Virus record (IMG/VR): IMGVR_UViG_3300027782_000027
Coordinates: 62,001 to 126,000 of that record
Direction: 5' to 3' (one strand)
DNA: 64,000 bases
Position numbers and translations under genes: made by a program. Under the pieces are notes generated by a model. It was given only the letters and a program-made list of their open reading frames with translations. It did not search any database and was not told the origin of the DNA. Shown piece after piece: positions 1-28,870 of this stretch; the stretch's first letter is position 1; each line of letters opens with the position of its first letter.

Positions 1-480
1 TCGTCAACATCTATACCAACATCTACACCAACTCCAACACCTTCTATAACTCCAACACCTTCTATAACCCCTACTAATACTGTTACGCCAACAAATACAA
101 TTACTCCTACTAACACTCAAACACCAACTAATACTGTTACACCAACAAATACTCAAACACCAACTAATACTGTTACACCAACAAATACAATTACACCAAC
201 AAATACAATTACTCCAACTCAAACACCGACTAATACTGTTACACCAACAAATACTCAAACACCAACACCTACTCAAACTCCTACTAATACACCGACACCT
301 TCAATTACCCCAACTAAAACTGTAACTCCAACGGTAACTCAAACACCTACTAATACTATAACTCCAACACCTTCAATTACTCCAACTAAAACTGTAACTC
401 CAACGGTTACTCAAACACCAACTAATACCACAACTAAAACACCTACACCAACTACTACACCTACACCAACAAGATTACCA
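1..480 (+). repeat. Coding Thr-Pro (TPTxT) low-complexity repeat, including a ~72-nt duplication (about 289-357 and 361-429)
   Basis: Recurrent acaccaac/actccaac units; [20 protein letters not shown] occurs twice. Confidence 0.9.
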
Positions 481-1122
481 GCATTAGTTTATGATTTAGA
501 CGCCGCTTATTATTCCGCAATGCCAACTAATGGTTCTGTAGTTTCTGGAACAGGAGCCTATAGTGTTACAGTAACTAATGCAGGAAGTAGTATATCTTGG
601 AACAGTGCAAATGGTGGGGTATTTATTAAATCAAATAATGTTGGTACAGATGCGATATATGGTGGTCCAAACTATGTAACCAGTCAAAGTTACACAGTAT
701 TTATGGCCTATAAACTATCAGCAACATCTCTTGGAAGATTGTTAAACACTCAAAATGAAAGTATTAAGGATTGGTTGATGGGGGCATACAATGGTAATCC
801 AAATACTTTTTATCCAAACTTTAGTGTAAACTTACCATCATCAGGAGCTGATACAGTTTGGCATTTAGATTGGGCAACTTGGGATACGGGGACTAATACA
901 GGTACACTGTATACCTCAACAAATACCGCCCCAACTAATTTCTCATATTCTGCAACTAATGGTGGTGGAGGTGGATTTAACCAAATAAGATTGTTTAGTC
1001 GTTCATCAGGTAGTGAAGTACAAACAGCAAACATAGGATTTGTTAAAGTTTGGGATGGGGTATTATCATTATCCCAAATACAGGCTCAACACGCTTTATA
1101 CAAAACTAGATTTGGATATTAA
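1..1122 (+). CDS. 5'-truncated virion protein: long Thr/Pro repeat stalk plus C-terminal LamG/ConA-like domain
   Basis: Frame 1 is open from base 1 ([18 protein letters not shown]...) into the tracked 520..1122 ORF. The C-terminus has LamG-like features (YDLDAAYY, IGFVKVWDGVLSLSQI). Confidence 0.8.
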   Translation, partial: SSTSIPTSTPTPTPSITPTPSITPTNTVTPTNTITPTNTQTPTNTVTPTNTQTPTNTVTPTNTITPTNTITPTQTPTNTVTPTNTQTPTPTQTPTNTPTPSITPTKTVTPTVTQTPTNTITPTPSITPTKTVTPTVTQTPTNTTTKTPTPTTTPTPTRLPALVYDLDAAYYSAMPTNGSVVSGTGAYSVTVTNAGSSISWNSANGGVFIKSNNVGTDAIYGGPNYVTSQSYTVFMAYKLSATSLGRLLNTQNESIKDWLMGAYNGNPNTFYPNFSVNLPSSGADTVWHLDWATWDTGTNTGTLYTSTNTAPTNFSYSATNGGGGGFNQIRLFSRSSGSEVQTANIGFVKVWDGVLSLSQIQAQHALYKTRFGY

Positions 1123-1191: not shown

Positions 1192-3027
1192 ATGAGTGAA
1201 AATAAACTAACGGTATGGCAACGGTTATCCCAAACATTTGGACCCAATTCTCTTTTGGGGCAGGATTATCCTACGTACAAATATGATAAAAGTGAATTAT
1301 TAAAAACAACCTCTAAGTCTGAATATGATAGAGAAAAACTTCAGGCACAACAAACATATTATTTAGCTAACCAATGGGGTAGAATTGAAAATAATCTATA
1401 TACACAGGCGGTTTATTATGAACCAACTCGTTTATCATCTTTCTACGACTATGAGTCAATGGAATTTACCCCTGAAATTGGTGCCGCTCTTGACATATAC
1501 GCTGAAGAATCTACAACCATTGACCAAAATGGTTTTATGTTACAAATTTATTCTGAATCATCGAGAATTAAATCAATTCTTGGAGATTTGTTTAATAATG
1601 CTTTAGATATTAACACTAACTTACCTATGTGGATAAGAAACACATGTAAGTATGGTGATAATTTTGTATATCTTAAATTAGACCCTGAAAAAGGTATTAT
1701 AGGATGTATGCAATTACCAATCATTGAGATTGAACGATTGGAAGCGGGTATGGGAGCACACTCAACAGACTCAACAACTAATCCTGAAAAGAAACATTTG
1801 AAGTTCAAATGGAAACAAAAGGATTTAGAGTTTAATACTTGGGAAATTGCTCACTTTAGATTACTTGGTGATGATAGAAGACTTCCTTATGGAACTTCTA
1901 TGTTAGAAAAGGCTCGTCGTATTTGGAAACAATTATTGTTATCTGAAGATGCTATGTTAATCTACAGAACATCAAGAGCACCTGAAAGACGTGTATTTAA
2001 AGTATTTGTTGGAAACATGGATGATGCGGATGTTGAACCATATATCCAAAGATTTGCTAATAAGTTTAAGAGAAGTCAAACGGTAGACCATAAGACAGGT
2101 AATGTGGATATGAGATTTAATCAGATGGCTGTTGACCAAGATTATTTCGTTCCAGTTAGAGATACCGCACAAGCAAGTCCTATTGAGACATTGGCGGGAG
2201 CTCAAAACTTATCTGAAATTGCCGACATCGAGTATATCCAAAAGAAATTGTTAACGGCTCTTCGTGTTCCTAAAGCGTTTTTAGGATTTGAAGAAACTGT
2301 TGGTGATGGTAAGAACTTATCATTACAAGATATTCGTTTTGCAAGAACTATTAATAGAATTCAGAAAAATATGATTTCTGAATTAAATAAAATTGCAATC
2401 ATACACCTATTCATTTTAGGTTTTGAAGATGAGATATCAAACTTTAATTTAAGTTTAACAAATCCATCAACTCAAGCTGATTTGATGAAGATTGATGTAT
2501 GGAAAGAAAAAATTCTTCTATATAAAGATATGGTTGCTGACCCTGGTAGTGGTATTGCCGCAGTATCTATGTCATGGGCTAAGAAACATATTCTTGGATT
2601 TTCTGATGAAGAAATTAAACTTGATTTACAACAACAACGTATTGAAAGAGCTGTTGGTGAAGAACTTAAGAAAACTGCTGAGGTAATTACTCATACAGGA
2701 TTATTCGATAATCTTGATAAGTTGTATGGTAAAAAGGAAGGTGAACCTGCTGCTGCACCATCAGAAGGAGGGGCACCACCAGATGGTGGAATGAGTGATT
2801 TTGGAGGTGGTGAAAGTGCTCCACCTGAAGCTCCGGCCTCACCAGCTCCAGCACCACCTGAAGCCGCTCCAACAGTACCTGAAGGGTCGTATACCCGTAA
2901 TTCTGAACTTAATATAATATTAGAAAATACAGGAATGTTAAATGAAGATGAATTAATTGATTTAAATCGTGTTCAAGAATCTTTAGGGGAAATGGGTAAT
3001 CAATTAGATAAACTACTTAAAGGTTGA
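1192..3027 (+). CDS. Portal protein (T4 gp20-like)
   Basis: YESMEFTPEIGAALDIYAEES, EDAMLIYRTSRAPERRVFK and DIEYIQKKLLTALRVPK motifs; sits at the start of the head module. Confidence 0.93.
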   Translation: MSENKLTVWQRLSQTFGPNSLLGQDYPTYKYDKSELLKTTSKSEYDREKLQAQQTYYLANQWGRIENNLYTQAVYYEPTRLSSFYDYESMEFTPEIGAALDIYAEESTTIDQNGFMLQIYSESSRIKSILGDLFNNALDINTNLPMWIRNTCKYGDNFVYLKLDPEKGIIGCMQLPIIEIERLEAGMGAHSTDSTTNPEKKHLKFKWKQKDLEFNTWEIAHFRLLGDDRRLPYGTSMLEKARRIWKQLLLSEDAMLIYRTSRAPERRVFKVFVGNMDDADVEPYIQRFANKFKRSQTVDHKTGNVDMRFNQMAVDQDYFVPVRDTAQASPIETLAGAQNLSEIADIEYIQKKLLTALRVPKAFLGFEETVGDGKNLSLQDIRFARTINRIQKNMISELNKIAIIHLFILGFEDEISNFNLSLTNPSTQADLMKIDVWKEKILLYKDMVADPGSGIAAVSMSWAKKHILGFSDEEIKLDLQQQRIERAVGEELKKTAEVITHTGLFDNLDKLYGKKEGEPAAAPSEGGAPPDGGMSDFGGGESAPPEAPASPAPAPPEAAPTVPEGSYTRNSELNIILENTGMLNEDELIDLNRVQESLGEMGNQLDKLLKG

Positions 3028-3761: not shown

Positions 3762-3941
3762 TTCAGTATTTTTTGAATTTTTATAAATAGCATTATTTAA
3801 AATCTGACGTTTCATGTCAGATTTTTTTTTATACTCTTTCCTGTCTTGTAATTCTTTTATCATTTTAGTTTTTAAAACTTTTGATTTGAATTTTTTAAGG
3901 GATTTTTCTATATCCCCTTTATCAACTGTGATAATTAACAT
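3756..3941 (-). CDS. rpsU: Phage-encoded ribosomal protein bS21 (61 aa)
   Basis: MLIITVDKGDIEKSLKKFKSKVLKTKMIKELQDRKEYKKKSDMKRQILNNAIY matches the Bacteroidota bS21 pattern (MLII.V..G..I..ALK.FK.K...R..F.KPS..R...KA.Y). True start is ATG 3941, not 4040. Confidence 0.9.
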   Translation of the reverse strand: MLIITVDKGDIEKSLKKFKSKVLKTKMIKELQDRKEYKKKSDMKRQILNNAIYKNSKNTEL

Positions 3942-3945
3942 TTTT

Positions 3946-3974
3946 TTGACAACTATGCTTTTGTGTGTTATTAT
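3946..3974 (+). promoter_or_regulatory. Sigma70-type promoter TTGACA-N17-TATTAT
   Basis: -35 at 3946-3951 and -10 at 3969-3974, upstream of ATG 4012. Confidence 0.7.
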
Positions 3975-17360: not shown

Positions 17361-18098
17361 TTACTCTTCCTTAACATCTATTAACGAAGAGTAAATTTTC
17401 TTGAATTTTTTAATTGAAGCTCTAATCTCTTTAGTTGACATATTTGTCATTTCACGAATAGATAATAAAATTACATTTTTATTAAATTTATTATTATCTG
17501 TTGCCGGAAATATCGTTTCGTAATTGTCTAAAATATCGATAAGTGCAAAACCTAATTTTAATTCATTATCATTTAATTCATCTTCTTCTATTGTTGTTTT
17601 AATATAATCTTTTAATATCGGAATTACATTATATTCTTGAATAGGTTCAATTTCTAAATAATAAATCATTTCAGGTCTATTTTCTAAATCACTTGAAATA
17701 TCCTCATATGAAATTTTTCTATTTGTTTCTTTTTGGTCTTTTAATATTTGGCCCATAAGATAATTCTTACAAATAGTTCCAAAATATGAGTAAGCTTTCT
17801 TTTCTTTTGAAGGACTAAATTTTTCAATTTTTGTCATCAAAAAAGAATGTGTGTCGGTATGAATTTCAGTAAAATTCATATCTTTTCTATACAATTTATA
17901 TCTTCTTATTATCGAAGATATCATCTTATCTAAAGGGAATCTTAAAAATTCATTATAAATTTTATTTTTTTCCTCAGAAGTAGATGCGGTTAGAAATAAT
18001 CTAACAGCATTTTCCTCTCTTATATCAAAATAATTTTCTGTGGCCGGTTTTTTCTTCTTAGTTAAAGAATCTTGAACAGACGTTGCACTTAAAATCAT
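17361..18098 (-). CDS. Phage sigma factor (T4 gp55-like late sigma, tentative)
   Basis: Sigma region-2-like segment IEKFSPSKEKKAYSYFGTICKNYL (compare gp55 F...AYFT.I..NAF). Confidence 0.6.
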   Translation of the reverse strand: MILSATSVQDSLTKKKKPATENYFDIREENAVRLFLTASTSEEKNKIYNEFLRFPLDKMISSIIRRYKLYRKDMNFTEIHTDTHSFLMTKIEKFSPSKEKKAYSYFGTICKNYLMGQILKDQKETNRKISYEDISSDLENRPEMIYYLEIEPIQEYNVIPILKDYIKTTIEEDELNDNELKLGFALIDILDNYETIFPATDNNKFNKNVILLSIREMTNMSTKEIRASIKKFKKIYSSLIDVKEE

Positions 18099-18916
18099 TA
18101 AACATTTTCAGGTGTATATTTTATGTTTCTGTCTTGGCTAAAGAAATATTCTTTTTTTGCAGTATTAACCCAAAACTTAACTTCATTTTCTGTTAACACA
18201 TTTTCGCCATTTTTATAATCCCAAAAAATAGAACCTTCTCTTAAATTCATATGTTTATAACCAATTCTTGGTATTGTCATGAATTTAACTGAGTTATAAG
18301 TCATTCTTAATAAAAACTCGTAAGCAAATGTTAGTTTAAACCCTGGTTTAAATCCTCCAAAATCTTCAACAATTTGTTTTTTAAATACCATACCTGAAGT
18401 TTGGAAATTTTGATAACTTAATAATGTTTCATTTGTTAATATTCCCATTTCTTGTGAGAAATTAGCAGCAAATGTCGCTTCGTTTGTAAATCCAGCAAAT
18501 ACTGATTTATTATCAACATCAACAACGATTGGCATAAATACATCTACATCAGTATAAATTTCTGAATATTTTCTAACATTTTTAAACCAAATTTTAGAAA
18601 ACTCATCGTCAAATTCTAAAATACTATTCCATTCAGTTTTTGAGTTTTTAATACCTGTATTAACTTGTTCGCAAAAACTAAGCTCACCGTCAAATTTAAT
18701 CTTATTAACTTTTAAATCACCAAAATCAAAATTGTTTAAATAATTAATTAAACTTTCTTCTTCAGAGTGAACAATTATAAGTTCGGTGGGTAATATATCT
18801 TGTATAGTTAATGACTCGATACTTTTTTTAAAAAACTCGTCAAAATCTCTAACTACTGAGGTTTTTAATGGTAATATAACACTTAATTCAAATTCTTTTT
18901 TCATATTATTGTTCAA
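18098..18916 (-). CDS. GT2-family glycosyltransferase
   Basis: LSVILPL...NTGIKNSKTEWNSILEFDDEF (GT-A fold, DD motif). Confidence 0.8.
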   Translation of the reverse strand: MNNNMKKEFELSVILPLKTSVVRDFDEFFKKSIESLTIQDILPTELIIVHSEEESLINYLNNFDFGDLKVNKIKFDGELSFCEQVNTGIKNSKTEWNSILEFDDEFSKIWFKNVRKYSEIYTDVDVFMPIVVDVDNKSVFAGFTNEATFAANFSQEMGILTNETLLSYQNFQTSGMVFKKQIVEDFGGFKPGFKLTFAYEFLLRMTYNSVKFMTIPRIGYKHMNLREGSIFWDYKNGENVLTENEVKFWVNTAKKEYFFSQDRNIKYTPENV

Positions 18917-19964
18917 TTAATTGTAATTTATTTATTTCTTCTTGAAATCCTTGAGTTCGTTTACTGAAGTAATCTGAAAATAATTCAATAACGTTCTTTT
19001 CAAATTTTTGAAAATCTGAAAACTCAGATGAAGTATCTAATCCATTTTGATATAATTTTTCAGATATATTATCTTCTAACCAATTTTGGATAAATTCGGC
19101 AACGAAATCAACTAATTTAATTTCTTCTTGAATCCAAATACCATTTTCTTCATTTAACCATGAGGGAACCATCTTAGGTAATACACCTAAAACAGGAACA
19201 TTAGATTTCATAGATTCCAATGGGAAAGTCCCAAAAGAACTTGTTTTATCAATCCAAACTGATAACATACAGTCCTTTAAAGTATTAGCAAATTCTTCTT
19301 CTGAAATTCCTCTCATGTCTCTAAATGTTACCCATCTAAATTGTGGATATTTTTGATAGAAAGTTTTAATCAGATTAATTGCCTCACGTTGTTCTCTTGA
19401 AGAGACTGCGATGATTGGTTTTGCCGGAAATTTAGATGTTGTAAATACAGGTGAAACAACAGGTTCTAATATATCAATTGAGAAGTTTCTCATAATATCC
19501 GAGATATATTTTTTCTGATTTTCAGAAGTTGTTATACATTTTGTAAATCCAAATTGACTCCATACTTGTCCTGGTTGTAAAGTTTCGAAAATATGGTCGT
19601 AAGCTTGTGATAAAACAACTTTAGTACAAGGTAAATTAGTTAATTGTGACATAATATACCCAAAAATTTCAGGAATAATAATGAAATCTTCAGGTGAAAT
19701 CCCTAAATTTTGACCTTCAACAGACTGATGAGGTAAATTAGAATATTTATCACCTAACCATCCTGAAACACCAAAATAATCTGGTTTTTCATGTAACATA
19801 ATCGGATTGTATCCGTTTTCTTTTAACGTTAATCCCATCTGGTAGATATATCTTACCGACGCATTAGCATTTCCCTTTGTGTCCTGAACAAAAAAATAAA
19901 TCTTTGATTTTTTATTTTTAAGGTTTTCAATAGAACCTTCAATTTTTAAAACTCTTTCTTCCAT
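18906..19964 (-). CDS. GT-B fold (GT4-like) glycosyltransferase
   Basis: IIIPE; SSFGTFPLESMKSNVPV (compare EgFGlp.lEAma.G.PV). Confidence 0.75.
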   Translation of the reverse strand: MEERVLKIEGSIENLKNKKSKIYFFVQDTKGNANASVRYIYQMGLTLKENGYNPIMLHEKPDYFGVSGWLGDKYSNLPHQSVEGQNLGISPEDFIIIPEIFGYIMSQLTNLPCTKVVLSQAYDHIFETLQPGQVWSQFGFTKCITTSENQKKYISDIMRNFSIDILEPVVSPVFTTSKFPAKPIIAVSSREQREAINLIKTFYQKYPQFRWVTFRDMRGISEEEFANTLKDCMLSVWIDKTSSFGTFPLESMKSNVPVLGVLPKMVPSWLNEENGIWIQEEIKLVDFVAEFIQNWLEDNISEKLYQNGLDTSSEFSDFQKFEKNVIELFSDYFSKRTQGFQEEINKLQLIEQ

Positions 19965-19967
19965 ATT

Positions 19968-20228
19968 TTAATATTTGTTTATTATTTTATTATTTAATAA
20001 AGTGTTGAATGCCAATTTAAATGGTATTGATAAATTTGATTTATGACCAAGTTTTTCATCAGTTTCTTCACTTTCTGATAGAACAACATCTACCATAATT
20101 TTTATTAGTTCATATTTTACAACACTAATATGTTGTTCACTATCTCCGCTAATACTCGCGTCATATGTAACACTGTCACTAATTAAATCTAAATCAATGT
20201 AATAGTGTTCATTAAGAATTGTCAGCAT
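19968..20228 (-). CDS. Hypothetical protein
   Basis: 86-aa ORF in the operon. Confidence 0.65.
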   Translation of the reverse strand: MLTILNEHYYIDLDLISDSVTYDASISGDSEQHISVVKYELIKIMVDVVLSESEETDEKLGHKSNLSIPFKLAFNTLLNNKIINKY

Positions 20229-20817
20229 CTAATTTATTTTTTAAAATTAACTTTAGTTCTTCGATAGAATTAATTGATTCATTACAATTAATTTTTTCGT
20301 TATAAATTGTATTGAATTTAATACAATTATTATAATTAATAAGAATATTAGGGTTAGAAGTAACTATTAAATCAAAATCTCCTAAAACTTTGGACTTATT
20401 TGAATCATTATAGAATAAAATTGATTCTATTAAACATCCGAACTTTGATAGGAAAAATAAAGTTGCGGGTTTTGTTTTACCTATTTCATCTGAAATTATT
20501 ACGATATCATTTTTATCTCTAAAATCTAAATAAAAGTCATTTAAATAGTTAAAACTTAACAATTCAGTTGAGGGTGAATGACCAAAAATCTCCATGGGAA
20601 ATTCTTCGTATAAAAAACTAAAAAACTCTTCTTTTGATTGAAATGAAAAATGATTCATTAAATCTAAAGAATTAATTGGTTCATTAATTACATATTCAAA
20701 CGGGTTTTCAGATTCAGAATTTTCTAAATTATTATCTATTAAAAATTTTTCGTAAGTGGTTTTAAACTTACCTATAGTATCTCTTAAAACTCCATTAATA
20801 TCAATTCCTATCTTCAT
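20212..20817 (-). CDS. HAD-family 5'(3')-nucleotidase-like protein
   Basis: MKIGIDINGVLRD, a DxDGVL-like motif with Asn at the second Asp. Confidence 0.6.
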   Translation of the reverse strand: MKIGIDINGVLRDTIGKFKTTYEKFLIDNNLENSESENPFEYVINEPINSLDLMNHFSFQSKEEFFSFLYEEFPMEIFGHSPSTELLSFNYLNDFYLDFRDKNDIVIISDEIGKTKPATLFFLSKFGCLIESILFYNDSNKSKVLGDFDLIVTSNPNILINYNNCIKFNTIYNEKINCNESINSIEELKLILKNKLDADNS

Positions 20818-21541
20818 ATCTTTTTAACATTTCAGTAATTAATGGATTTCTAACAACATCACCATCACCAAACTCATGAACACCAATTTCGGAAATATTT
20901 TTAAATTTTTCAATAGCATCCCATAACCCTGAATGTTTTTTATCTTTATATCTATCAGTTTGTTCTAAGTCACCTGATATGAAAAATTTACTATCAGTAC
21001 CAATACGAGTTAATAATAATTTCATTTGTTTAGGAGTTGCGTTTTGAGCTTCTTCAAATATTAAAATAGAATTATCAATATTCATTCCTCTCATATACGC
21101 TAAAGCAAATACTTCAATAACCTCCATTTGTTTTAATTTCTCTCTTGCTTCTTTACCTATGATTTTATTCAATAAGTAATATGATGGGAAAATATACGGG
21201 TCTAATTTTTCTTCAACATTACCGGGTAATGAACCAAGTTTTTCTTCAGCCTCAACTGCTGGTCTAACTATAATAATCTTTTCGTAAGGTGATGTGTGGT
21301 CAGCTAATAAATCAACAGCCGCTTTCATTGCAATAAAACTTTTACCAACACCTGCCGGACCTGAACAAATTGTAATTTGATTTTTAACTAATTTATCGTA
21401 ATACTCTCTTTGACTTTGAGTTAAGAATTTATCTTTACTCTTTTTAATCATAACACTAATTTGGTCTTTTTTAGACATTCTTGGTTTAGCTTCAGTGGAA
21501 ATATACTGAGTGTCTTTGATAATTGTTTTTTTTCTTGTCAT
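20801..21541 (-). CDS. phoH: PhoH-family ATPase
   Basis: GPAGVGKS, RPAVEAEEKLGSLPG, AYMRG, EEAQN and GDLEQTD motifs. Confidence 0.93.
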   Translation of the reverse strand: MTRKKTIIKDTQYISTEAKPRMSKKDQISVMIKKSKDKFLTQSQREYYDKLVKNQITICSGPAGVGKSFIAMKAAVDLLADHTSPYEKIIIVRPAVEAEEKLGSLPGNVEEKLDPYIFPSYYLLNKIIGKEAREKLKQMEVIEVFALAYMRGMNIDNSILIFEEAQNATPKQMKLLLTRIGTDSKFFISGDLEQTDRYKDKKHSGLWDAIEKFKNISEIGVHEFGDGDVVRNPLITEMLKRYEDRN

Positions 21542-21544
21542 TAT

Positions 21545-22369
21545 TTAATTTGTGTGTAACTTTTTTGAGAATAATTGCATTTCAATTATCTGAAATTCCA
21601 ATTCAGGTATATCATATTTTATATCAAAAATTGTTGATAATGTTCTATCAACAATATATTCTGAATCAACTGGATTAATTTCAATATTTAAATTGTATGA
21701 ATTTGACAACATTTTAACTAAATCATATTTTGAGACTTGAGTTGGTGAGATGAAATGTTTAGTTCCCTTCCAAAAATCTTTGTTATTTATAATTTTTTCT
21801 ACTAATTTAGCCCATTCTAAACAAGTTATACCGTTCCAAAAATGATTCAGAAACCCATTAACTTTATTATTTTTTTGACTTTTAACCCATTCAACTAAAG
21901 ACCTATGTTGATTAATTTCTTCCCCAATTATTGAAGTTCGAATTATTGTGCAATTTTTTGGTTCCCCAATAGCCTTAGACATACCATATACATCATCAAC
22001 ATCATATTTATCTTTTTCATTATATTTCCCTTTTTTACCTGAATATACACAATCTGTTGTTGGGTGAATCATGTCCCATTTATTTTTTTCGCAAATATTT
22101 GATAACATTCTTGGAAATACTGAGTTAACTAAAATAGCATTTAAATCCCCTAATTGGTCAACTCTTGGTTTAATAGTACCAATACAATTTATGATAACGT
22201 CTCCCTGATTTACACCACAATTAATTAAAATTTCTTCTAATGTTTTTTCTGTTTGTTGAGAGGCGTCAAGAACATCTCTATTAATTTCGTTAACATTAAA
22301 TTTTTCGGATAAATAAGTGTAAACATATTTACCTAACATACCTTTTGAACCTAAAATATAAATTTTCAT
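21545..22369 (-). CDS. rmlD: dTDP-4-dehydrorhamnose reductase-like SDR
   Basis: ILGSKGMLG, INCIG, TTDCVYSG, YGMSK and IIRTSIIG motifs. Confidence 0.85.
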   Translation of the reverse strand: MKIYILGSKGMLGKYVYTYLSEKFNVNEINRDVLDASQQTEKTLEEILINCGVNQGDVIINCIGTIKPRVDQLGDLNAILVNSVFPRMLSNICEKNKWDMIHPTTDCVYSGKKGKYNEKDKYDVDDVYGMSKAIGEPKNCTIIRTSIIGEEINQHRSLVEWVKSQKNNKVNGFLNHFWNGITCLEWAKLVEKIINNKDFWKGTKHFISPTQVSKYDLVKMLSNSYNLNIEINPVDSEYIVDRTLSTIFDIKYDIPELEFQIIEMQLFSKKLHTN

Positions 22370-22371
22370 AA

Positions 22372-22406
22372 TTTTTTTTATTTTTTTTATTTTTTTTATT
22401 TTTTTA
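22372..22406. repeat. (T8A)3-T7A microsatellite (A-rich leader on the minus strand)
   Basis: Read directly between the rmlC and rmlD genes. Confidence 0.8.
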
Positions 22407-22823
22407 TCTAAAATCTTCTTCCCATATATTCCAATTATCGTGCGGTAATCTTATATCGTCACCTAAACTTTCTTCTAATGAAGTAGTTGAAAAGAAAATA
22501 ACTGAAGTGTTATCTTCTAAATTTTTAAAACCATTATAATGGTTTGGTGGAATAAATAATACTTTTGGTTGTTTTGAACTTAAAATATATTTTGTAATTT
22601 CTTCAGTTTCCATGTCAACAATCCCAATAAGGGCGGTTCCACTCGAAACATAAACATATTTCCCTTCTTTTTTGTGACCATGCCACGCTCTTATAAAACC
22701 TTGCCTATGATTTTCAACTTGATAAAATCTTTTTATATTTTCAAAATTGAAGTCATTAACAAATCTAACCGAACCCCTGTCATCAACAGAGATACCACCA
22801 TTCATTAATTTTTTTGTGTCCAT
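22404..22823 (-). CDS. rmlC: dTDP-4-dehydrorhamnose 3,5-epimerase-like cupin
   Basis: DDRGSV, IRAWHGH and LFIPPNHYNGF motifs. Confidence 0.8.
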   Translation of the reverse strand: MDTKKLMNGGISVDDRGSVRFVNDFNFENIKRFYQVENHRQGFIRAWHGHKKEGKYVYVSSGTALIGIVDMETEEITKYILSSKQPKVLFIPPNHYNGFKNLEDNTSVIFFSTTSLEESLGDDIRLPHDNWNIWEEDFR

Positions 22824-23779
22824 AATAATTCTTTTTGATTTTTTTTATTTGTTAAAAACGCTCCATTGTGGTAAACTTTATCTTCAGGATTTTCAATTCT
22901 ATTTTCTTCAAATAAAGTTACCATTCTTAATACCTCATCTTCAACGGTTGTAATTGGTTTATATTTAAAAACTTTTAAAGATTTTGAATTATCAACACGA
23001 TAATTTCTAGCATCTTGAAAAGATATTTCAGTGTATGTTACTTTAGTATTAGGTACTATTTTAGCAACACGTTCACCTAGTTCTTTAATTATAACATTTT
23101 CTTTTGATAAAACAAAAATTCCGGGATACTTTTCTTTACATGCCTCTGTAATGTATCCTGCAATATCTTTAACCGCAATTATTGGTCTCCATTGTTCACC
23201 TCCATTAATAGTTATAGTACCTTCTTTTACCGCTTTCATAGTTAAAACATTAACAACTAAATCCATTCTAATTCTAGAATATGTGTCACCAAGACCAAAG
23301 ACAGTTCCTAATCTGAAAATTGTCCCATTTTTATCTAAAATGTGTTTTTCGGCTTTAAGTTTTGTTGAAGCGTATGATGATAATGGATTTGTTTCACTTA
23401 ATTCATCTAATATACCATCTTGAGCTCCGTAAACTGAACACGTAGACATAAAAATTAAATGTTTATCAGATGGAACAATATTACAAAAATTTTTGATAGA
23501 ATTATAATTAATTTCTTCAGTTAAAAATGGGTCAACACTACAAGCCGGGTCACCAACTAGAGCCGCCATTAAAACTATAATATCAAAATCTTTAGATACT
23601 TCATAAAGTTTATTAGTATCTCTAATGTCTCCATAAATAAAAGAAACATCTTTTAAATATCTATTTTCATATAATAAATTATCGTAAATAGTTATATCAA
23701 ACCCTTCTCTAATAAGATAATCTGATGTTAATCCTCCGATGTAACCGGCACCACCGACTAATAAAACTTTTTCTTTCAT
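22805..23779 (-). CDS. NAD-dependent nucleotide-sugar epimerase/dehydratase
   Basis: VGGAGYIG, STCSVYG, YASTK and RLGTVFG motifs. Confidence 0.9.
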   Translation of the reverse strand: MKEKVLLVGGAGYIGGLTSDYLIREGFDITIYDNLLYENRYLKDVSFIYGDIRDTNKLYEVSKDFDIIVLMAALVGDPACSVDPFLTEEINYNSIKNFCNIVPSDKHLIFMSTCSVYGAQDGILDELSETNPLSSYASTKLKAEKHILDKNGTIFRLGTVFGLGDTYSRIRMDLVVNVLTMKAVKEGTITINGGEQWRPIIAVKDIAGYITEACKEKYPGIFVLSKENVIIKELGERVAKIVPNTKVTYTEISFQDARNYRVDNSKSLKVFKYKPITTVEDEVLRMVTLFEENRIENPEDKVYHNGAFLTNKKNQKELLWTQKN

Positions 23780-23807
23780 TATTTTATAAATTTATATTTT
23801 TTTACTT

Positions 23808-24632
23808 TTAAAAAACAGGTATTGTTTCAGCTTTACATCCTCCAAACCACCATATACATTCTGAAAATGTACTGAGACGATTGCAAACCAACATATCACA
23901 TTTTGAGGCTATTAACATACTGGCTGCGGAATATTGCATTTGAGTAACATTATTTGGTTTAGTATAAGTTATTACATTATAGTCTTTTAAGTATTCTAAA
24001 TATTCAGGTAAAACACTGTCGTTATCTGAAGTAAGAAAAATAGTTTTTACTTTTGGTAAAAATTCATTAATTGCATTTTTATAAGTTTCAAAATTATAAT
24101 CTCTAATAACACCGTCTCGAATACTTGTACAGTTTGGAGGGTCAAATTGATGAGTCCAAGTTCTTATTTGTATGGTAAGTAATGGGTATTCAAAATCTTT
24201 TGATACTCTCTCAACTTCAGATAATACTTCAGGTCTCCATTTAATTTTACCAATTCCTTTTTGTATTCTATTAAATACTGTATTACATATTAAATTTCTA
24301 TTAAAAAACCAATCAATTGAATGTGTCGAAAATAAATATGATAAATTTTTGTTGACGATATTTGGATGGTCTCCTAATGATTTCGCATCATTTATTAAAT
24401 CCGGTTGTTCATTTTCTTCTGATTTTAAAATAAGAAATCTTGCAGAAATAAACGATTGACCAAATTCATGAGAACCATGACAAATTAAACTATCGTCTAA
24501 AATTTCTTGATAATCAGCATCAAAATGAGCATCAAATCTAGGTAAAAGATTAGTTTCACCTATACTTAAAGCTGTAACAAAAGATTTTAAAACATTACAT
24601 AAACCAGATTTTATTTCTACTGTAAATTTCAT
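23808..24632 (-). CDS. Fucosyltransferase-like GT-B protein (NodZ/GT11/GT23-like)
   Basis: SGLCNVL, IQIRTW, IFLTSDN and STFSECIWW match the GLGN/HIR/FLASD/STFS pattern; start taken at MKFTV. Confidence 0.6.
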   Translation of the reverse strand: MKFTVEIKSGLCNVLKSFVTALSIGETNLLPRFDAHFDADYQEILDDSLICHGSHEFGQSFISARFLILKSEENEQPDLINDAKSLGDHPNIVNKNLSYLFSTHSIDWFFNRNLICNTVFNRIQKGIGKIKWRPEVLSEVERVSKDFEYPLLTIQIRTWTHQFDPPNCTSIRDGVIRDYNFETYKNAINEFLPKVKTIFLTSDNDSVLPEYLEYLKDYNVITYTKPNNVTQMQYSAASMLIASKCDMLVCNRLSTFSECIWWFGGCKAETIPVF

Positions 24633-24639
24633 ATATATT

Positions 24640-25563
24640 TTATTTAACAAATTCATTAATTAAATTAATCCATTTTTCACGACAACGCTCTAATGTGTAT
24701 TCTTTTGAATAATATTCACGTGGTGTAAATAATTGACGATTATTTGTAACATATCTTATTGTTTCAGGAAAATCTTCGTCATTAGCAACTAATCCCCATG
24801 TTTCATCATCTTTTCTATCTAAATAACACCCCATAGGTCTTGCGACCATTGGTATATTACACGCACCTATTTCTATCCCAGCAAAATGACCTTCTTCATT
24901 TCCCGATGTACAAATACCACATACTGATGAATTAATTAAAAGTCTAACTGTAGTTGTGTCAACTCTATTAAATATTTTTACCCTATCTTTACTATGAGAA
25001 GGAATAATATCAATTGTTGTATTATCTTTCATTACTAAACAAAAATTAAAATCAGGCATTTGCTCAATTAGATTTAAAACTCTATGAAATCCTTTTTTTT
25101 CATTAGAAGAATCACCTATAAAAATAATTGAATTAGGTAAAACATCAGGATGTTTTTCAGGGATGGGTTTAAAAAAATCAAAATCAGAAGATTGTTCAAT
25201 TATCCTTACGTTTTTTGGATTAATTCTTTCTTTGTATATATTATACGTTTCTTTTGATGCAAATACCACACATGTACATGAATTTATGACTTCAGTCTGC
25301 ATTGGATTGTTCATAGTATCTTGTATTAAACAAAATGTTGGAACATCAATATTAAGTTTACGAAAATAACTACCGTTTCTAATTATATAATCTGGGCGAT
25401 TCTCAATTGATTCTATTCTATCTGCTAATATAGAATAATCTGTATATCCATCGCATTTATCTTGAAGATTGGGAAACCAATCTAATAAGTCATGCCAAAA
25501 TGTTCTTGTATTAGGAATACAAGTCAATCTATCATTAACTAACCACCCAATTTTGTTTTTCAT
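24640..25563 (-). CDS. GT4-like glycosyltransferase
   Basis: KKGFHRVL; CTSGNEEGHFAGIEIGACNIPMV (EX7E motif). Confidence 0.75.
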   Translation of the reverse strand: MKNKIGWLVNDRLTCIPNTRTFWHDLLDWFPNLQDKCDGYTDYSILADRIESIENRPDYIIRNGSYFRKLNIDVPTFCLIQDTMNNPMQTEVINSCTCVVFASKETYNIYKERINPKNVRIIEQSSDFDFFKPIPEKHPDVLPNSIIFIGDSSNEKKGFHRVLNLIEQMPDFNFCLVMKDNTTIDIIPSHSKDRVKIFNRVDTTTVRLLINSSVCGICTSGNEEGHFAGIEIGACNIPMVARPMGCYLDRKDDETWGLVANDEDFPETIRYVTNNRQLFTPREYYSKEYTLERCREKWINLINEFVK

Positions 25564-25585
25564 AATATATTTTATTTTTTATTTT

Positions 25586-26557
25586 TTATTTTTTATAAAT
25601 GTCTAACCAATAATTTATCATTTCGTCCATCATCGTTTCAAAAGTATATTCAGGTTTCCATCCTAAAGACCTAATTTTACTTGAGTCTCCTTTAAGATAT
25701 GGTAATTCTTCAGGTCTTAAAAACTTATCATTTTGAACAACGTAGTTTTTATAATTTAAATTTAATTTACTAAAAACATATTCACACATATCTCTAACTG
25801 ACCTAGATTCTCCAGTGGCAACAACTAAATCGACTGGATTATCTTGTTGTAATATTAAATGCATTGCTTTTACATAGTCTTTTGAATGTCCCCAGTCTCT
25901 GTAAGAATCCATGTTACCAAGTTCTAATTTATCAGATAAACCTAAACTTATCATCACCGCGGCTTTAACTACTTTATTGGTAACAAAATTAGAACCTCTA
26001 CGAGGAGATTCATGATTGAATAAAATACCATTGTTGGCATGTAAATTATACGCATTTCTATAATTTCGAACAATGTTATACCCAAATACTTTACTACACC
26101 CATATGGTGAAACTGGATTCATATGAGTTGTTTCTCTTTGATATCCATCAGGGTCTACCGAACTTCCAAACATTTCCGAACTACTCGCTTGATAAAATTT
26201 TGATTTAGGACAAATTCTACGATAAGCGTCTAAAATATTTAAAACACCTAAAGAATTAACTTGTGATGTAAATTGTGGGATATCATAACTAATACGTACA
26301 TGACTTTGAGCTGCTAAATTGTATATCTCATCAGGTTGTATTTCATTTAATAATCTTTCAATATTAGATTGGTCTAATAAGTCACCATAATATATATTTA
26401 TTTTGTCTCGAATTTCGTCAAGTCTACTTTGTTGATGTTCAGGTGTGGAATTTCTTCGTATAATACCATGAACTTCATATCCTAATGATAAAAGATATTC
26501 TGCTAGATATGACCCATCTTGGCCACTCACACCGGTTATAAATGCACGTTTAATCAT
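25586..26557 (-). CDS. gmd: GDP-mannose 4,6-dehydratase
   Basis: ITGVSGQDGSYLAE, YNLAAQSHV, QASSSEMFG, SPYGCSK and LFNHESPRRG motifs. Confidence 0.95.
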   Translation of the reverse strand: MIKRAFITGVSGQDGSYLAEYLLSLGYEVHGIIRRNSTPEHQQSRLDEIRDKINIYYGDLLDQSNIERLLNEIQPDEIYNLAAQSHVRISYDIPQFTSQVNSLGVLNILDAYRRICPKSKFYQASSSEMFGSSVDPDGYQRETTHMNPVSPYGCSKVFGYNIVRNYRNAYNLHANNGILFNHESPRRGSNFVTNKVVKAAVMISLGLSDKLELGNMDSYRDWGHSKDYVKAMHLILQQDNPVDLVVATGESRSVRDMCEYVFSKLNLNYKNYVVQNDKFLRPEELPYLKGDSSKIRSLGWKPEYTFETMMDEMINYWLDIYKK

Positions 26558-26566
26558 ATTTTATTT

Positions 26567-27190
26567 TTAACTTTTAAAAAAATTCATTTTAGTCAAATCT
26601 GGCCAATCCTCATATTTCCATTTTTTAGGATTTGTATTAATAGCGTTAGATAATTTATCTAATCCTAATTTGGCAGTCTCAGGAGTCATATAGTAATGGT
26701 AACCCATAGTATCAATATTTTGTTCTCTCCATGGAATATTGGGTAGTCTGCCGTCATAACTCATTTTTTTTAACTGAATAGCATCTTGTTCGTTGTCCAA
26801 AAGAATCATACCACCTCTACCTAAACTTAAATGTTTTTGAAATTGAAAACTTAAACACATATATGTGTTTGGAATATAACTGTCTTTTTTCCACAATACT
26901 GCAGCGTCAATTATTCTTTTTTCTTCGTAATTTAAAGTGTAATAATCTTCCCATTTTTCATCTCTCCAATTTAATCCAATTCCCAATTTTTTAGACAACA
27001 TGGGTATGGATAAATAAGTTCGTAATGGGACATTAATTTTAGTAGTATTTGTTAGTCTTAAACATAACTCGATACCATGGGTACAACTATCTACAGCAAC
27101 TGCATAAGGGGCATTGTAAAATTGTGATATTTTTTTTTCAAATTCCGTCACAGTATCCATATTCACTTGTTCCATAAGATTAGTAATCAT
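26567..27190 (-). CDS. DegT/DnrJ-family PLP sugar aminotransferase (short, 207 aa)
   Basis: AVDSCTHGIELCL, IIDAA and SFQFQKHLSLGRGGM (PLP lysine). Confidence 0.8.
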   Translation of the reverse strand: MITNLMEQVNMDTVTEFEKKISQFYNAPYAVAVDSCTHGIELCLRLTNTTKINVPLRTYLSIPMLSKKLGIGLNWRDEKWEDYYTLNYEEKRIIDAAVLWKKDSYIPNTYMCLSFQFQKHLSLGRGGMILLDNEQDAIQLKKMSYDGRLPNIPWREQNIDTMGYHYYMTPETAKLGLDKLSNAINTNPKKWKYEDWPDLTKMNFFKS

Positions 27191-27707
27191 ATCCTAATTT
27201 TTTTGCATTGTAAAGTATTCTTGTACTATCTATTTTTTTAACTAAAATTGCTGGATTTCCTTTATATACCCCCCATTCTTCAGTATCACCCATTAATAAA
27301 CTACCTGCAGATAATAGAACACCCCGTCTTAATCTTGAGCCGGGTAATACAATAGAATTTGTTCCGATATTAGAAAATTCTTCCATAAAAACAGGTTTAA
27401 TTATTTGAGTACCTTTTAATTCTTCAGGTATCATTGCTCCAAATAATCCACTATCATCAAATCTATCTGAACCACATACAATTCTAGCTCCGGCCATTAT
27501 GTTATTAAACCCTTTAGCCGTAAAATCTGAGTTTTTACCACCTATAATTGTCACATAAGGACTAATATGTGTATAATCACTAATATATAATTTTGTGGTA
27601 CAATAAAATCCTTTATCTATTGCAACATGATTACCTATAACACAATTATTTTTTTCTTTTATTATTATATCTAAATCTAAAACAACATCATTACCTATTT
27701 TCATCAA
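27180..27707 (-). CDS. Hexapeptide-repeat (LbH) sugar acetyltransferase
   Basis: IGTNSIVLPG...GVLLSAGSLL and GNPA motifs. Confidence 0.85.
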   Translation of the reverse strand: MMKIGNDVVLDLDIIIKEKNNCVIGNHVAIDKGFYCTTKLYISDYTHISPYVTIIGGKNSDFTAKGFNNIMAGARIVCGSDRFDDSGLFGAMIPEELKGTQIIKPVFMEEFSNIGTNSIVLPGSRLRRGVLLSAGSLLMGDTEEWGVYKGNPAILVKKIDSTRILYNAKKLGYDY

Positions 27708-28114
27708 ATAAAAGTTTTATCAATTGTTTGACCAAAATACGGCCCTGTTTTATATTCATATACAATAGTATCGTCTTCTAAAATCAAATAATTATGACCA
27801 CCATTAAATGTAAAACTAATATCACCTGCGGATAATATAGGTTCTGCAATCACATTATCATCAATGTCATAGAAAATACATTTTACCTTTCCTTTTATAA
27901 CACACCAACTTTCTTGAGGTATATAATTTTCGTCATGTCTTGGGATTATGTTATGTTTGTGAGGTTTAAATGTGTGTCCTTTAGATAATTTTAAACTGGC
28001 ACACTGAAGATAGTTTTTATCAGTACTTAAATCGGTTCTTTTGGAAATAACATCAGATAATCTCACAACTTGATGAAGGAGTTCTCCATTAATTTTAGAA
28101 TATATTTTTTCCAT
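27704..28114 (-). CDS. Cupin sugar isomerase (WbuC-like)
   Basis: PHKH...QE...GGH...YEYKTGPY motifs. Confidence 0.75.
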   Translation of the reverse strand: MEKIYSKINGELLHQVVRLSDVISKRTDLSTDKNYLQCASLKLSKGHTFKPHKHNIIPRHDENYIPQESWCVIKGKVKCIFYDIDDNVIAEPILSAGDISFTFNGGHNYLILEDDTIVYEYKTGPYFGQTIDKTFI

Positions 28115-28137
28115 ATTATTTTTTTAATTTTAACATT

Positions 28138-28866
28138 TTAATCATCTTTTTCACCTTCTTGTATGTGGTATACTAATGAATCAAAAACAGTTACGTGTTT
28201 CATACCATAGTTTGATTCAAGTTTTCTAAAGTACCAGTCATCTCCACTTTGTACGACCCAACCGTTTAATGTTCCAATTCCGTCAGGGTAAATATTACCT
28301 TCAGGGTACTTACCACTCTCTAAAAATCTTGTTTTTTCAAGTATACATGGCATATATAATCCACCTGAATAAATTTTATCTTCTCTTATTGTTGTATTTA
28401 CCTTTTCCCAAAGTTCGAAATCAATATTATTTGGGTGTTTTCCACAATTAATACTTAATCCATATGTTCCACTTCCCATTTTTCCGCTTTCAACTAATCT
28501 AGATGTCGGAATATTAATTCCATCATGATGTTTTAATAAATTTTCTAACCAACCATCACTAAAAACCATATCAGAATTGACGAAACATATATTGTCATAT
28601 TCACTGGTTTCACCCGCAAAATTCCAACATCGATATACTCGATTTAAATAATAATCATTAGGTTTTGTGTCATTATAAATTGTATATGGAATATCTAAAG
28701 TTTTTAATTTATCTAAAATTTCTTGTGTTGCGTCATTCGCTACAATTCTCAAACTAACATCCCACCCATTAACCTTACATTTGTTACTTTTTAATTCATT
28801 ATAAATTAATTCTAAATAGTCAATTGATTTAAAAATTAATGAAATTATTTCAACGTTTTTTTTCAT
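28138..28866 (-). CDS. GT-A fold glycosyltransferase
   Basis: WNFAG...CFVNSDMVFSDGWLENL; LVYH. Confidence 0.75.
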   Translation of the reverse strand: MKKNVEIISLIFKSIDYLELIYNELKSNKCKVNGWDVSLRIVANDATQEILDKLKTLDIPYTIYNDTKPNDYYLNRVYRCWNFAGETSEYDNICFVNSDMVFSDGWLENLLKHHDGINIPTSRLVESGKMGSGTYGLSINCGKHPNNIDFELWEKVNTTIREDKIYSGGLYMPCILEKTRFLESGKYPEGNIYPDGIGTLNGWVVQSGDDWYFRKLESNYGMKHVTVFDSLVYHIQEGEKDD

Positions 28867-28870
28867 GTAT

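What the first reader, a model, noticed from the sequence alone, without database searches (positions are those of the whole stretch)
1..1122. Mucin-like Thr/Pro stalk capped by a LamG-like domain, directly upstream of the portal
Seen: at least 160 codons of TPTxT repeats followed by a lectin-like domain. Established: long Thr/Pro linkers are typical O-glycosylation substrates (mucins, cellulase linkers) and are protease-sensitive when unglycosylated. Inference: this is a glycosylated virion whisker that presents a lectin tip, with the phage glycosyltransferase island as the likely modifier.
Basis: partly seen in the sequence, partly recalled or inferred. Interest (0 to 1): 0.6.

Follow-up and report, generated by a model that had tools for sequence, protein, structure and literature searches.

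The report
Mucin-like stalked lectin fibre of a jumbo phage
A large freshwater T4-like phage carries, in a swappable gene slot between its DNA-packaging and portal genes, a protein made of a short docking piece, a 162-residue Thr/Pro "mucin-like" stalk and a lectin-fold tip, and the same genome encodes an enzyme family that starts mucin-type sugar chains on threonine, so the stalk may be sugar-coated, though no one has measured this.

Summary
The window cuts the gene at its 5' end. The full ORF has 426 aa: a 48-aa N-terminal module, 162 aa of TPTxTx repeats (47% Thr, 23% Pro) and a 216-aa C-terminal domain. It lies 3 nt after TerL and 69 nt before the T4-type portal.

The tip matches no Pfam, PHROG or PDB sequence. 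It folds confidently (pLDDT 85.5) as a ConA/LamG jelly roll (Z 17.5 to a cyanophage tailspike).

The TerL|portal junction is a variable slot in 63 related loci:
- 25 are empty.
- 14 hold only the roughly 50-aa N-module.
- 24 hold the N-module followed by stalks of 0-175 aa and swapped tips (LamG-like, Laminin_G_3, LRR, DUF285, beta-propeller, Cys-rich).

The glycosylation idea cannot be proven here, but it now has a specific candidate: a PF11397 (GT60-like polypeptide GlcNAc-transferase) gene outside the window. It is present in all 8 TP-linker genomes first checked and absent from the 6 checked genomes without such linkers. Among 24 further TP-linker contigs, 11 carry it; 13 do not, including three complete genomes. 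Only 4 of 50,697 GenBank phages have a homologue. One of them, XacN1, has PAS-positive virion proteins.

Virion location and the "whisker" reading are inferred, not shown.

The parts
1..471 (+). Thr/Pro stalk, the in-window part. It covers codons 54-210 of the 426-aa protein. The first 5 stalk codons and the 48-aa N-terminal module lie upstream of the window, at G000 61842-62000.
   Evidence: Translation; TRF periods of 18-72 bp; composition 47% Thr and 23% Pro with about 26 TPTxTx units.
472..1122 (+). C-terminal 216-aa ConA/LamG-fold tip domain plus the stop codon.
   Evidence: No Pfam, PHROG or PDB sequence hit. AF2 on alignment A1 gives pLDDT 85.5. Foldseek PDB and BFVD and VIA-align all return ConA-like lectin folds; the best is the Pan3 tailspike 9vyh_q at Z 17.5, rmsd 3.0, 203 residues aligned. 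hhalign links the last 48 aa to a PF13385 domain at probability 86%.
1192..3027 (+). T4-type portal (gp20-like). It forms the downstream border of the variable slot.
   Evidence: PF07230, E 1.6e-75. It is conserved at 71-100% identity in 80 related loci.
18098..33144 (-). Sugar-nucleotide and glycosyltransferase island. It is a possible source of extension sugars and elongating transferases; a link to the stalk is inferred only.
   Evidence: Pfam hits: GT2-like, RmlD-like, NAD-epimerase, GDP-mannose 4,6-dehydratase (E 1e-111), a DegT fragment, GT17-like, GT2, UDP-GlcNAc 2-epimerase (E 5e-66) and a GT2_5+GT4 fusion.
38290..41214 (+). A second protein (974 aa) with a Thr/Pro linker of about 140 aa between globular parts. 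It shows that the linker is a genome-wide building block.
   Evidence: Composition scan; the DNA is 67% identical to the stalk DNA; TP-pattern hits at G000 102441-102598.

Best explanation
The gene encodes a non-essential, modular surface fibre of a roughly 290-kb freshwater T4-like jumbo phage. It has three parts.

1. N-terminal module. A core of about 27 residues within a 48-aa module (MGxxxRKKSGxxxxGS[KR]hhVxGQG) is the constant part and most likely docks the protein onto the particle. Its position in the head gene block suggests the head or neck, but the site is unknown.

2. Stalk. The 162-aa TPTxTx stalk is an extended, uncharged spacer, roughly 30-50 nm long if it adopts a polyproline-II-like conformation (inference). 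It is also a recombination joint at which tips are exchanged.

3. Tip. The ConA/LamG-fold tip binds a ligand, probably a polysaccharide on the host envelope or its surroundings, and so promotes adsorption.

The stalk threonines are probably O-glycosylated in the host cytoplasm. The proposed initiating enzyme is the phage's own soluble PF11397/GT60-like polypeptide GlcNAc-transferase, possibly followed by extension by other phage transferases. That would stiffen the stalk and protect it from proteases.

Shown: the anatomy, the fold, the slot variability, the mosaicism, and the partial co-occurrence of enzyme and linker. Inferred: virion location, docking site, ligand, and glycosylation.
For: Anatomy and position:
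- The anatomy is established.
- The gene sits in the late head block TerL-X-portal-protease-scaffold-MCP.
- It is an insertion: in Flavobacterium phage immuto, one of the closest cultured relatives by MCP, TerL abuts the portal.

Slot behaviour:
- Of 63 related loci, 25 are empty, 14 hold a 42-56-aa N-module alone, and 24 are extended.
- Tips seen in the slot include Laminin_G_3, LRR, DUF285, a DUF5122 propeller and Cys-rich modules.
- The N-module is single-copy and found only in this slot.

Mosaicism:
- Against L108: N-module 92% identical, tip 19%.
- Against L031: N-module 40%, tip 90%.
- The distal stalk is shared among variants.

Origin and movement of the tip:
- The tip family is absent from lineage relatives, including a 100%-complete genome.
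- It is common as a stand-alone 230-240-aa protein in another T4-like jumbo lineage, so the tip was imported.
- The same tip (89% identical) sits on a different N-terminal domain via TP linkers in P0006, 3.2 kb upstream of a PF11397 gene.

Fold.

Glycosylation:
- The PF11397 ORF scores 232.7 bits against a cut-off of 21. It has a DSH (DxH) motif and no TM segment.
- It is present in 5 of 5 TP-linker genomes of this lineage, each time within 0.1-5 kb of a TP-linker gene. It is absent from 5 of 5 linker-free jumbo phages and from 14 control genomes.
- Only 4 of 50,697 GenBank phages have a homologue. The three tested carry 17, 10 and 6 TP-pattern hits; immuto carries none.
- 11 of 24 TP-linker contigs chosen by length alone carry it.
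- XacN1 virions hold at least 2 PAS-positive proteins, and its ORF334 is the homologue (PMC5852040).
- GT60 enzymes start mucin-type O-glycans on Thr of Thr-rich peptides (PMC8724618, PMC3769586).
- Neither protein has a signal peptide or TM segment, so both would be in the cytoplasm together.
Against: - There are no proteomic, imaging or expression data for this uncultured phage.
- The docking partner is unknown. The N-module matches no known family.
- The tip family is unusually conserved for a receptor-binding tip: at least 66% identity over more than 1000 metagenomic clusters.
- TP linkers exist without PF11397 in three complete phage genomes of 57-166 kb, in two 80-81%-complete proviruses, and in giant-virus contigs. 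The enzyme is therefore not needed for such linkers in general.
- The co-occurrence rests on few independent lineages.
- PT linkers work unglycosylated in some bacterial enzymes (own knowledge).
- That PF11397 equals CAZy GT60 is from my own knowledge, not from a tool.
- The XacN1 glycoproteins were not identified.
Confidence: 0.5

Rival explanations
1. The protein is the same exposed modular fibre, but the stalk is a bare Pro/Thr spacer. It serves only as an extended linker and a recombination joint. The PF11397 enzyme and the glycosyltransferase islands act on something else, such as host envelope glycans, phage DNA or other proteins.
For: TP linkers occur in complete phage genomes that lack PF11397. 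Phage glycosyltransferases are also known to modify DNA or host serotype (PMC12619734). The mosaic breakpoints inside the stalk, and the 67-82% DNA identity between linkers of different genes, already give the linker a role without sugar.
Against: PF11397 is very rare in phages (4 of 50,697). It is concentrated in TP-linker genomes and lies beside TP-linker genes. XacN1 virions are PAS-positive.
Confidence: 0.3
2. The protein is not on the particle. It is a soluble cytoplasmic or lysis-released protein, for example a decoy or a glycan-binding factor acting on the infected cell or its debris. Its place in the head gene block is incidental cargo of a permissive insertion site.
For: The slot is empty in 25 of 63 relatives and sometimes holds unrelated extra genes, for example a collagen-repeat protein and DUF285 proteins. 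No virion data exist.
Against: A conserved N-module that also exists alone, and always precedes the variable parts, argues for a docking function. There is no signal peptide or TM segment for export. The closest structural match is a phage tailspike component, and the BFVD matches include an S-PM2 virion structural protein.
Confidence: 0.12
3. The N-module is a capsid-targeting peptide, and the protein is packaged inside the head and ejected into the host, like T4 internal proteins.
For: The gene lies between TerL and the portal, next to the prohead protease and scaffold genes. The N-module is short and basic. An I-F-E triplet, resembling a T4 prohead-protease site, ends the module in this phage (sequence).
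Against: The I-x-E site is not conserved in P0004 or P0137. Long uncharged stalks with lectin, LRR or propeller tips are typical of surface adhesins, not of ejected proteins. The stand-alone N-module forms would then have no cargo.
Confidence: 0.06

Closest known systems
Xanthomonas jumbo phage XacN1 (and Xoo-sp13, Stenotrophomonas CM1 and RAS14)
   Same: These are jumbo myoviruses (309-385 kb) that match this phage's gp23-type MCP or are close kin of ones that do. They are the only GenBank phages with a homologue (44-47% identical) of the PF11397 enzyme. XacN1, Xoo-sp13 and RAS14 each have many TPTP[ST]xTPT linkers in large structural-region proteins; CM1 was not scanned. XacN1 virions contain at least 2 PAS-positive glycoproteins (PMC5852040).
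   Different: They infect other hosts (Xanthomonadaceae) and have a different genome composition. No TerL|portal slot protein has been described for them. The glycoproteins and the responsible enzyme were not identified.
Protist mucin-type O-glycosylation by GT60 polypeptide alpha-GlcNAc-transferases (T. cruzi OGNT-2, Dictyostelium Gnt2; cytoplasmic Gnt1 on Skp1)
   Same: The Pfam family is the same (PF11397), with a DxH motif. The acceptors are Thr-rich, Pro-flanked repeats such as KPPTTTTTTTTKPP (PMC3769586, PMC8724618). The phage enzyme is soluble, like cytoplasmic Gnt1 (own knowledge).
   Different: Those enzymes are eukaryotic and mostly Golgi membrane proteins. Activity of the phage enzyme is untested. 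No prolyl hydroxylase (PF13640) was found in this lineage, so a Skp1-type hydroxyproline route is unlikely.
Glycosylated capsid and tail-tube subunits of mycobacteriophages (Freeman et al. 2023, cited in PMC12619734)
   Same: Phage-encoded transferases decorate virion proteins inside the host cytoplasm.
   Different: In those phages short C-terminal extensions of the major subunits are modified. Here the proposed substrate is a 162-aa repeat stalk in an accessory fibre, and the candidate enzyme belongs to another family. I could not read the paper itself.
T4 accessory display proteins: fibritin (wac) whiskers and Hoc; T5 pb10
   Same: They are non-essential virion proteins with a small anchoring part that hold a distal domain away from the particle. 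Hoc-type Ig domains bind glycans (own knowledge).
   Different: Fibritin is a trimeric coiled coil with a foldon, and Hoc and pb10 use Ig-like domains. Here the stalk is a Pro-rich low-complexity repeat and the tip is a ConA/LamG jelly roll. There is no sequence or Pfam relation.
Pro/Thr linkers of bacterial and fungal glycoside hydrolases (e.g. Cellulomonas fimi Cex/CenA)
   Same: They are (PT)n-type extended linkers between a catalytic or anchor domain and a binding domain, O-glycosylated in the native host and protease-sensitive when bare (own knowledge).
   Different: Those are secreted proteins modified outside the cytoplasm. The phage protein has no export signal and is several-fold longer than typical linkers.
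Laminin_G_3 / ConA-like proteins of cyanophages and other phages (S-PM2, S-SKS1, Pan3 tailspike 9vyh)
   Same: They share the jelly-roll fold (TM 0.66-0.77, Z 17.5). Several are virion or tail-spike components.
   Different: Sequence identity is 7-20%. The tip family here is below Pfam detection and forms its own very abundant metagenomic family.

Membership tests
Laminin_G_3 (PF13385) / ConA-like lectin-glucanase superfamily | Sequence match to the Pfam model above its gathering score | tested here: not met
   No Pfam family at E<=10 for the 216-aa domain. None at E<=0.01 for the in-window ORF.
Laminin_G_3 (PF13385) / ConA-like lectin-glucanase superfamily | Two-sheet jelly-roll beta-sandwich fold | tested here: met
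   AF2 model with pLDDT 85.5 and 14 strands. Foldseek PDB gives E 1e-7 to 1e-5. BFVD gives TM up to 0.77 to 'Concanavalin A-like lectin/glucanases superfamily' phage proteins. VIA-align gives Z 12-17.5 to lectin, CBM40, pentraxin and tailspike domains.
Laminin_G_3 (PF13385) / ConA-like lectin-glucanase superfamily | Profile-level homology to a bona fide PF13385 domain | tested here: inconclusive
   hhalign of A1 against the PF13385-bearing second domain of P0012 gives probability 86% over the last 48 residues only. Atlas feature neighbours include clusters in which 21-100% of members carry PF13385.
Laminin_G_3 (PF13385) / ConA-like lectin-glucanase superfamily | Carbohydrate (or other ligand) binding | not testable with these tools
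   Fold alone does not show function. 48 invariant columns in A1 suggest a constrained site.
Mucin-type / PT-linker O-glycosylated domain | Tandem Thr/Ser/Pro-rich repeats with few charged or bulky residues | tested here: met
   162 aa with 75% Thr+Pro+Ser, 3 Lys as the only charged residues, and about 26 TPTxTx units; TRF.
Mucin-type / PT-linker O-glycosylated domain | An initiating polypeptide glycosyltransferase available in the same compartment | tested here: met
   PF11397 ORF at G000 162128-163372, 232.7 bits. No TM segment in the enzyme or the substrate.
Mucin-type / PT-linker O-glycosylated domain | Glycans actually attached to the repeat | not testable with these tools
   The only indirect evidence is PAS-positive virion proteins in XacN1, which carries the homologous enzyme and TP linkers.
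GT60 / PF11397 polypeptide GlcNAc-transferase (the candidate modifier) | Match to the family model over nearly its whole length, and the GT-A DxH metal motif | tested here: met
   Profile positions 2-349 of 352 are matched. The D-S-H motif is invariant in 7 phage homologues at about 45% identity. That DxH is the metal motif of GT27/GT60 is from my own knowledge.
GT60 / PF11397 polypeptide GlcNAc-transferase (the candidate modifier) | Transfers GlcNAc to Thr (or Hyp) of a polypeptide | not testable with these tools
PF13640 prolyl hydroxylase is absent from the lineage, which favours Thr over Hyp as acceptor.
T4 fibritin-type neck whisker | Trimeric alpha-helical coiled-coil shaft with a C-terminal foldon | tested here: not met
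   The shaft is 23% Pro and 47% Thr, which is incompatible with a coiled coil. The C-terminus is a 216-aa jelly roll. No Pfam or PHROG relation.
T4 fibritin-type neck whisker | Attachment to the neck | not tested
   The docking partner is unknown. No complex prediction was run, because neighbourhood alone is weak grounds and monomer models would miss oligomeric interfaces.
Hoc-like capsid decoration protein | Tandem Ig-like domains plus a capsid-binding domain | tested here: not met
   No Ig-like family was found by Pfam. The tip is ConA-like.

The most novel reading that the evidence does not exclude
A lineage of jumbo phages makes true 'phage mucins'. A docking peptide of about 27 residues, encoded in a dedicated TerL|portal slot, carries a long Thr/Pro stalk. 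A phage-encoded GT60-type polypeptide GlcNAc-transferase, an enzyme family otherwise known from protist mucin synthesis, densely O-glycosylates that stalk in the bacterial cytoplasm. The stalk displays plug-in lectin, LRR or propeller tips that are exchanged by recombination within the stalk DNA. This would be a bacterial-virus counterpart of the glycosylated fibrils of giant viruses, and a natural display platform.
Probability: 0.3. Interest if true: 0.8.

Novelty: new variant of a known kind. Interest (0 to 1): 0.62.

Why it matters
Glycosylated virion proteins are known from very few phages, and the enzymes and acceptor rules are largely unknown. This finding pairs a defined acceptor type (TPTxTx stalks) with a defined, rare enzyme family, and there is a cultured system (XacN1) in which virion glycoproteins have already been seen. 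That makes the question directly testable.

The slot also shows how a phage can re-aim an accessory fibre by swapping tips at a low-complexity joint. This bears on host range and adsorption in abundant freshwater jumbo phages. The tip family has more than 1000 metagenomic clusters and no annotation. The short docking module could also be of use as a display tag.

Tried and rejected
- Single-sequence AlphaFold of the tip failed (pLDDT 34.8). It was replaced by an alignment-based model.
- Pfam, PHROGs and PDB sequence searches of the tip and the N-module gave nothing usable. The one PHROG hit (phrog_15511) lies in the low-complexity stalk.
- tblastn of the tip against 50,697 GenBank phages found no match.
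- A giant-virus origin of the 330-356-kb contigs that carry stand-alone tips was rejected: they have no NCLDV capsid, and all have gp23. However, the NCLDV model rang nowhere, so that half of the test is weak.
- A Skp1-like hydroxyproline route was considered. No PF13640 prolyl hydroxylase is present in the lineage.
- The generic co-occurrence of GT2 genes with TP linkers (4-7 against 0-4 hits) is too unspecific to count as evidence.
- A prohead-protease site at the end of the N-module is not conserved.
- Literature searches for Pro/Thr linkers or mucin-like proteins in phage virions found nothing relevant.
- The Freeman 2023 paper is not held.
- Complex prediction was not used. There is no single well-founded partner, and the blind-neighbour pass rate is close to the expected true-positive rate.
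- The large representative-protein search was not used, as the operators advised.

Full report
**1. What is in the sequence**

The window is bases 62001-126000 of a 240,759-bp IMG/VR virus record (CheckV 82% complete). The reading frame of the finding runs off the 5' edge of the window. In the parent record it starts with ATG at G000 61842, 3 nt after the stop of a 581-aa large terminase. It ends at window 1122, 69 nt before a T4-type portal gene (PF07230, E 1.6e-75). After the portal come a prohead protease (PF03420), an acidic scaffold-like protein and a gp23-type major capsid protein.

The 426-aa product has three parts:
- a 48-aa basic N-terminal module, outside the window;
- a 162-aa stalk (residues 49-210);
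- a 216-aa C-terminal domain (window 472-1119).

The stalk has 76 Thr, 37 Pro and 9 Ser. Its only charged residues are three Lys. It is organised as about 26 TPTxTx hexapeptides. Three independent contigs from other metagenomes carry the identical 1281-nt gene, so the repeat is not an assembly artefact. Neither this protein nor the enzyme discussed in section 5 has a hydrophobic segment.

**2. The tip**

Pfam, PHROGs and PDB sequence searches find nothing. A single-sequence fold failed.

The word-indexed protein search returned 1045 relatives. Most are 230-241-aa stand-alone proteins. Some are fused to a PF13385 Laminin_G_3 domain or to other modules.

With an alignment of 104 of these relatives, the AlphaFold model is confident (pLDDT 85.5, pTM 0.88). 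It is a ConA/LamG jelly roll, and three structure searches agree:
- Foldseek against the PDB matches the lectin-like sub-domain of clostridial neurotoxin-associated and receptor-binding proteins, the lectin domain of trans-sialidase, a carbohydrate-binding domain of arabinanase AbnA, and the tailspike of cyanopodophage Pan3. These are fold resemblances only.
- BFVD gives TM 0.66-0.77 to phage 'Concanavalin A-like' proteins, including S-PM2 proteins.
- VIA-align gives Z 17.5 (rmsd 3.0, 203 residues) to the Pan3 tailspike and Z 12-17 to CBM40, pentraxin and calreticulin-type lectin domains.

A profile comparison links only the last 48 residues to a true PF13385 domain. The domain is therefore LamG-like by fold. 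It is a sequence family of its own.

**3. The slot**

In Flavobacterium phage immuto, one of the closest cultured relatives by MCP, TerL is followed directly by the portal.

Among the 80 closest portal relatives in IMG/VR, 63 loci contain both genes:
- In 25 the gap is 32-78 bp.
- In 14 there is a 160-240-bp gap that holds a 42-56-aa ORF or a match to the N-module.
- In 24 there are larger genes.

All the slot proteins begin with the same short module, whose core is MGxxxRKKSGxxxxGS[KR]hhVxGQG. The small ORFs are this module alone. In the larger genes it is followed by Thr/Pro stalks of 0-175 residues and by different C-terminal modules:
- this LamG-like domain;
- a true Laminin_G_3;
- leucine-rich repeats;
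- DUF285;
- a DUF5122 beta-propeller;
- Cys-rich domains.

The module is single-copy and found only in the slot.

The relationships are mosaic:

| Compared locus | N-module identity | Tip identity |
|---|---|---|
| L108 | 92% | 19% (unrelated tip) |
| L031 | 40% | 90% |
| L026 | 67% | 57.5% |

L026 differs within the tip, yet it shares the distal stalk and the last 28 residues.

The tip family is absent from the other genomes of this lineage, including a 100%-complete 293,850-bp genome. It is common in a different gp23-bearing jumbo lineage, so it was imported.

In another relative the same tip (89% identical) is joined through Thr/Pro linkers to a different N-terminal domain (P0006). The genome has at least four further Thr/Pro-linker proteins whose linker DNA is 67-82% identical to the stalk. 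This gives recombination a substrate.

**4. Reading**

The architecture is a constant small module, a long uncharged spacer and interchangeable binding modules, in a dispensable gene inside the head gene block. That fits an accessory surface fibre best. Where it docks (capsid, neck or elsewhere) is not known. 'Whisker' in the T4 sense (a coiled-coil fibritin) is not met.

**5. Glycosylation**

The window holds a sugar-nucleotide and glycosyltransferase island at 18.1-33.1 kb on the minus strand. It encodes GDP-mannose dehydratase, reductase and epimerase genes, UDP-GlcNAc 2-epimerase, and GT2, GT4 and GT17-like enzymes. A second island lies at G000 211-222 kb. These are unspecific.

The specific lead came from the P0006 locus. 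There, a PF11397 'GlcNAc' transferase follows the Thr/Pro-linker genes. G000 has such a gene at 162128-163372. It encodes 414 aa, scores 232.7 bits and has an invariant D-S-H motif. It lies next to a Laminin_G_3 protein and 2.8 kb from a Thr/Pro-linker gene.

The family shows the following distribution:
- It is present in 5 of 5 genomes of this lineage, each time within 0.1-5 kb of a TP-pattern hit.
- It is absent from 5 of 5 jumbo phages without such linkers and from 14 control prokaryote genomes.
- Only four of 50,697 GenBank phage records have a homologue: XacN1, Xoo-sp13, CM1 and RAS14.
- The three of those that I tested carry 17, 10 and 6 TP-pattern hits, against 0 for immuto and 0 for the reversed-pattern controls.
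- Of 24 viral contigs picked only for carrying the pattern and for their length, 11 carry PF11397, although many are fragments. Three complete genomes and two near-complete proviruses lack it.

The XacN1 paper reports at least two periodic-acid-Schiff-positive virion proteins. It names ORF334, which is this homologue, as one of the phage's two glycosyltransferases (PMC5852040).

GT60 enzymes initiate mucin-type O-glycans by adding GlcNAc to Thr of Thr-rich peptides in T. cruzi and Dictyostelium (PMC8724618, PMC3769586). That PF11397 corresponds to GT60 and includes cytoplasmic Gnt1 is from my own knowledge. No PF13640 prolyl hydroxylase is present.

I rate stalk glycosylation at about even odds. 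The association is striking, but it rests on few independent lineages and no chemistry.

**6. Context**

The MCP is closest to an uncultured 484-kb phage, to Flavobacterium phage immuto, to a Microcystis phage and to Rhodothermus phage RM378. The related contigs come from freshwater samples. A recently described freshwater jumbo lineage predicted to infect Bacteroidota ('moraphages', 200-307 kb, with several core glycosyltransferases) may be the same or a neighbouring group (PMC12619734). I did not test this.

**7. Limits**

No complex prediction was run. The counts of loci are not de-replicated. Fold matches do not show function.

Noticed in passing
window 6978-8867: The gp23-type major capsid protein is 629 aa. 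The Pfam match covers only residues 344-616. tblastn to the closest phage MCPs covers 53-58% in two pieces, which implies an insertion of roughly 250 aa, rich in Gly, Ser, Thr and Pro, near residues 100-340. It could be a surface domain or a docking site.
   Followed up: partly
window 18098-33144 (minus strand): A dense sugar-nucleotide and glycosyltransferase island: GDP-mannose 4,6-dehydratase, RmlD-like and epimerase genes, a short DegT-like fragment (206 aa), GT17-like, GT2, UDP-GlcNAc 2-epimerase, and a GT2_5+GT4 fusion. PhoH lies in the middle of it.
   Followed up: partly
G000 162128-163372 (outside the window; L199:1351-2595): A PF11397 (GT60-like) polypeptide GlcNAc-transferase gene. 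The family is extremely rare in phages (4 of 50,697 GenBank records), and here it lies beside LamG and Thr/Pro-linker genes.
   Followed up: yes
G000 158971-159972, 186418-186681; P0006; L184:2319-3359 and 3366-4928: A second recurrent N-terminal domain of about 75 aa (MSxxTIxNxSG..PY..) that also precedes Thr/Pro linkers and variable tips. It may be a second docking module.
   Followed up: no
L035-L104 (loci of another T4-like jumbo lineage): In 21 of 80 loci the stand-alone 230-240-aa LamG-like gene lies 0.5-1.9 kb upstream of a distant TerL (22-29% identical). The tip family is therefore often near packaging genes in other phages too.
   Followed up: no
window 5557-6951: The acidic scaffold-like protein contains an exact direct duplication of a 17-residue segment (EEETEEMVYEIEMDS...).
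   Followed up: no
window 1192-3027: The portal protein has a C-terminal Pro/Ala/Glu/Gly-rich low-complexity tail (about residues 520-570) that is outside the Portal_T4 Pfam match, which ends at residue 481.
   Followed up: no
L209, L265, L270 (GVMAG contigs) and G016, G022-G024, G026: The same TPTP[ST]xTPT... coding pattern occurs in giant-virus MAG contigs. It also occurs in a 166-kb genome (G016), three 60-kb proviruses (G022-G024) and a 57-kb DTR genome (G026), three of them rated 100% complete, all of which lack PF11397. Such linkers are therefore widespread in viruses.
   Followed up: partly
L138, L157, L159, L184 (slot proteins of relatives): Some slot proteins carry two or three tandem copies of the N-module motif (RKKSGxxFxGS[KR]xxVxGQ) before the stalk.
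   Followed up: no
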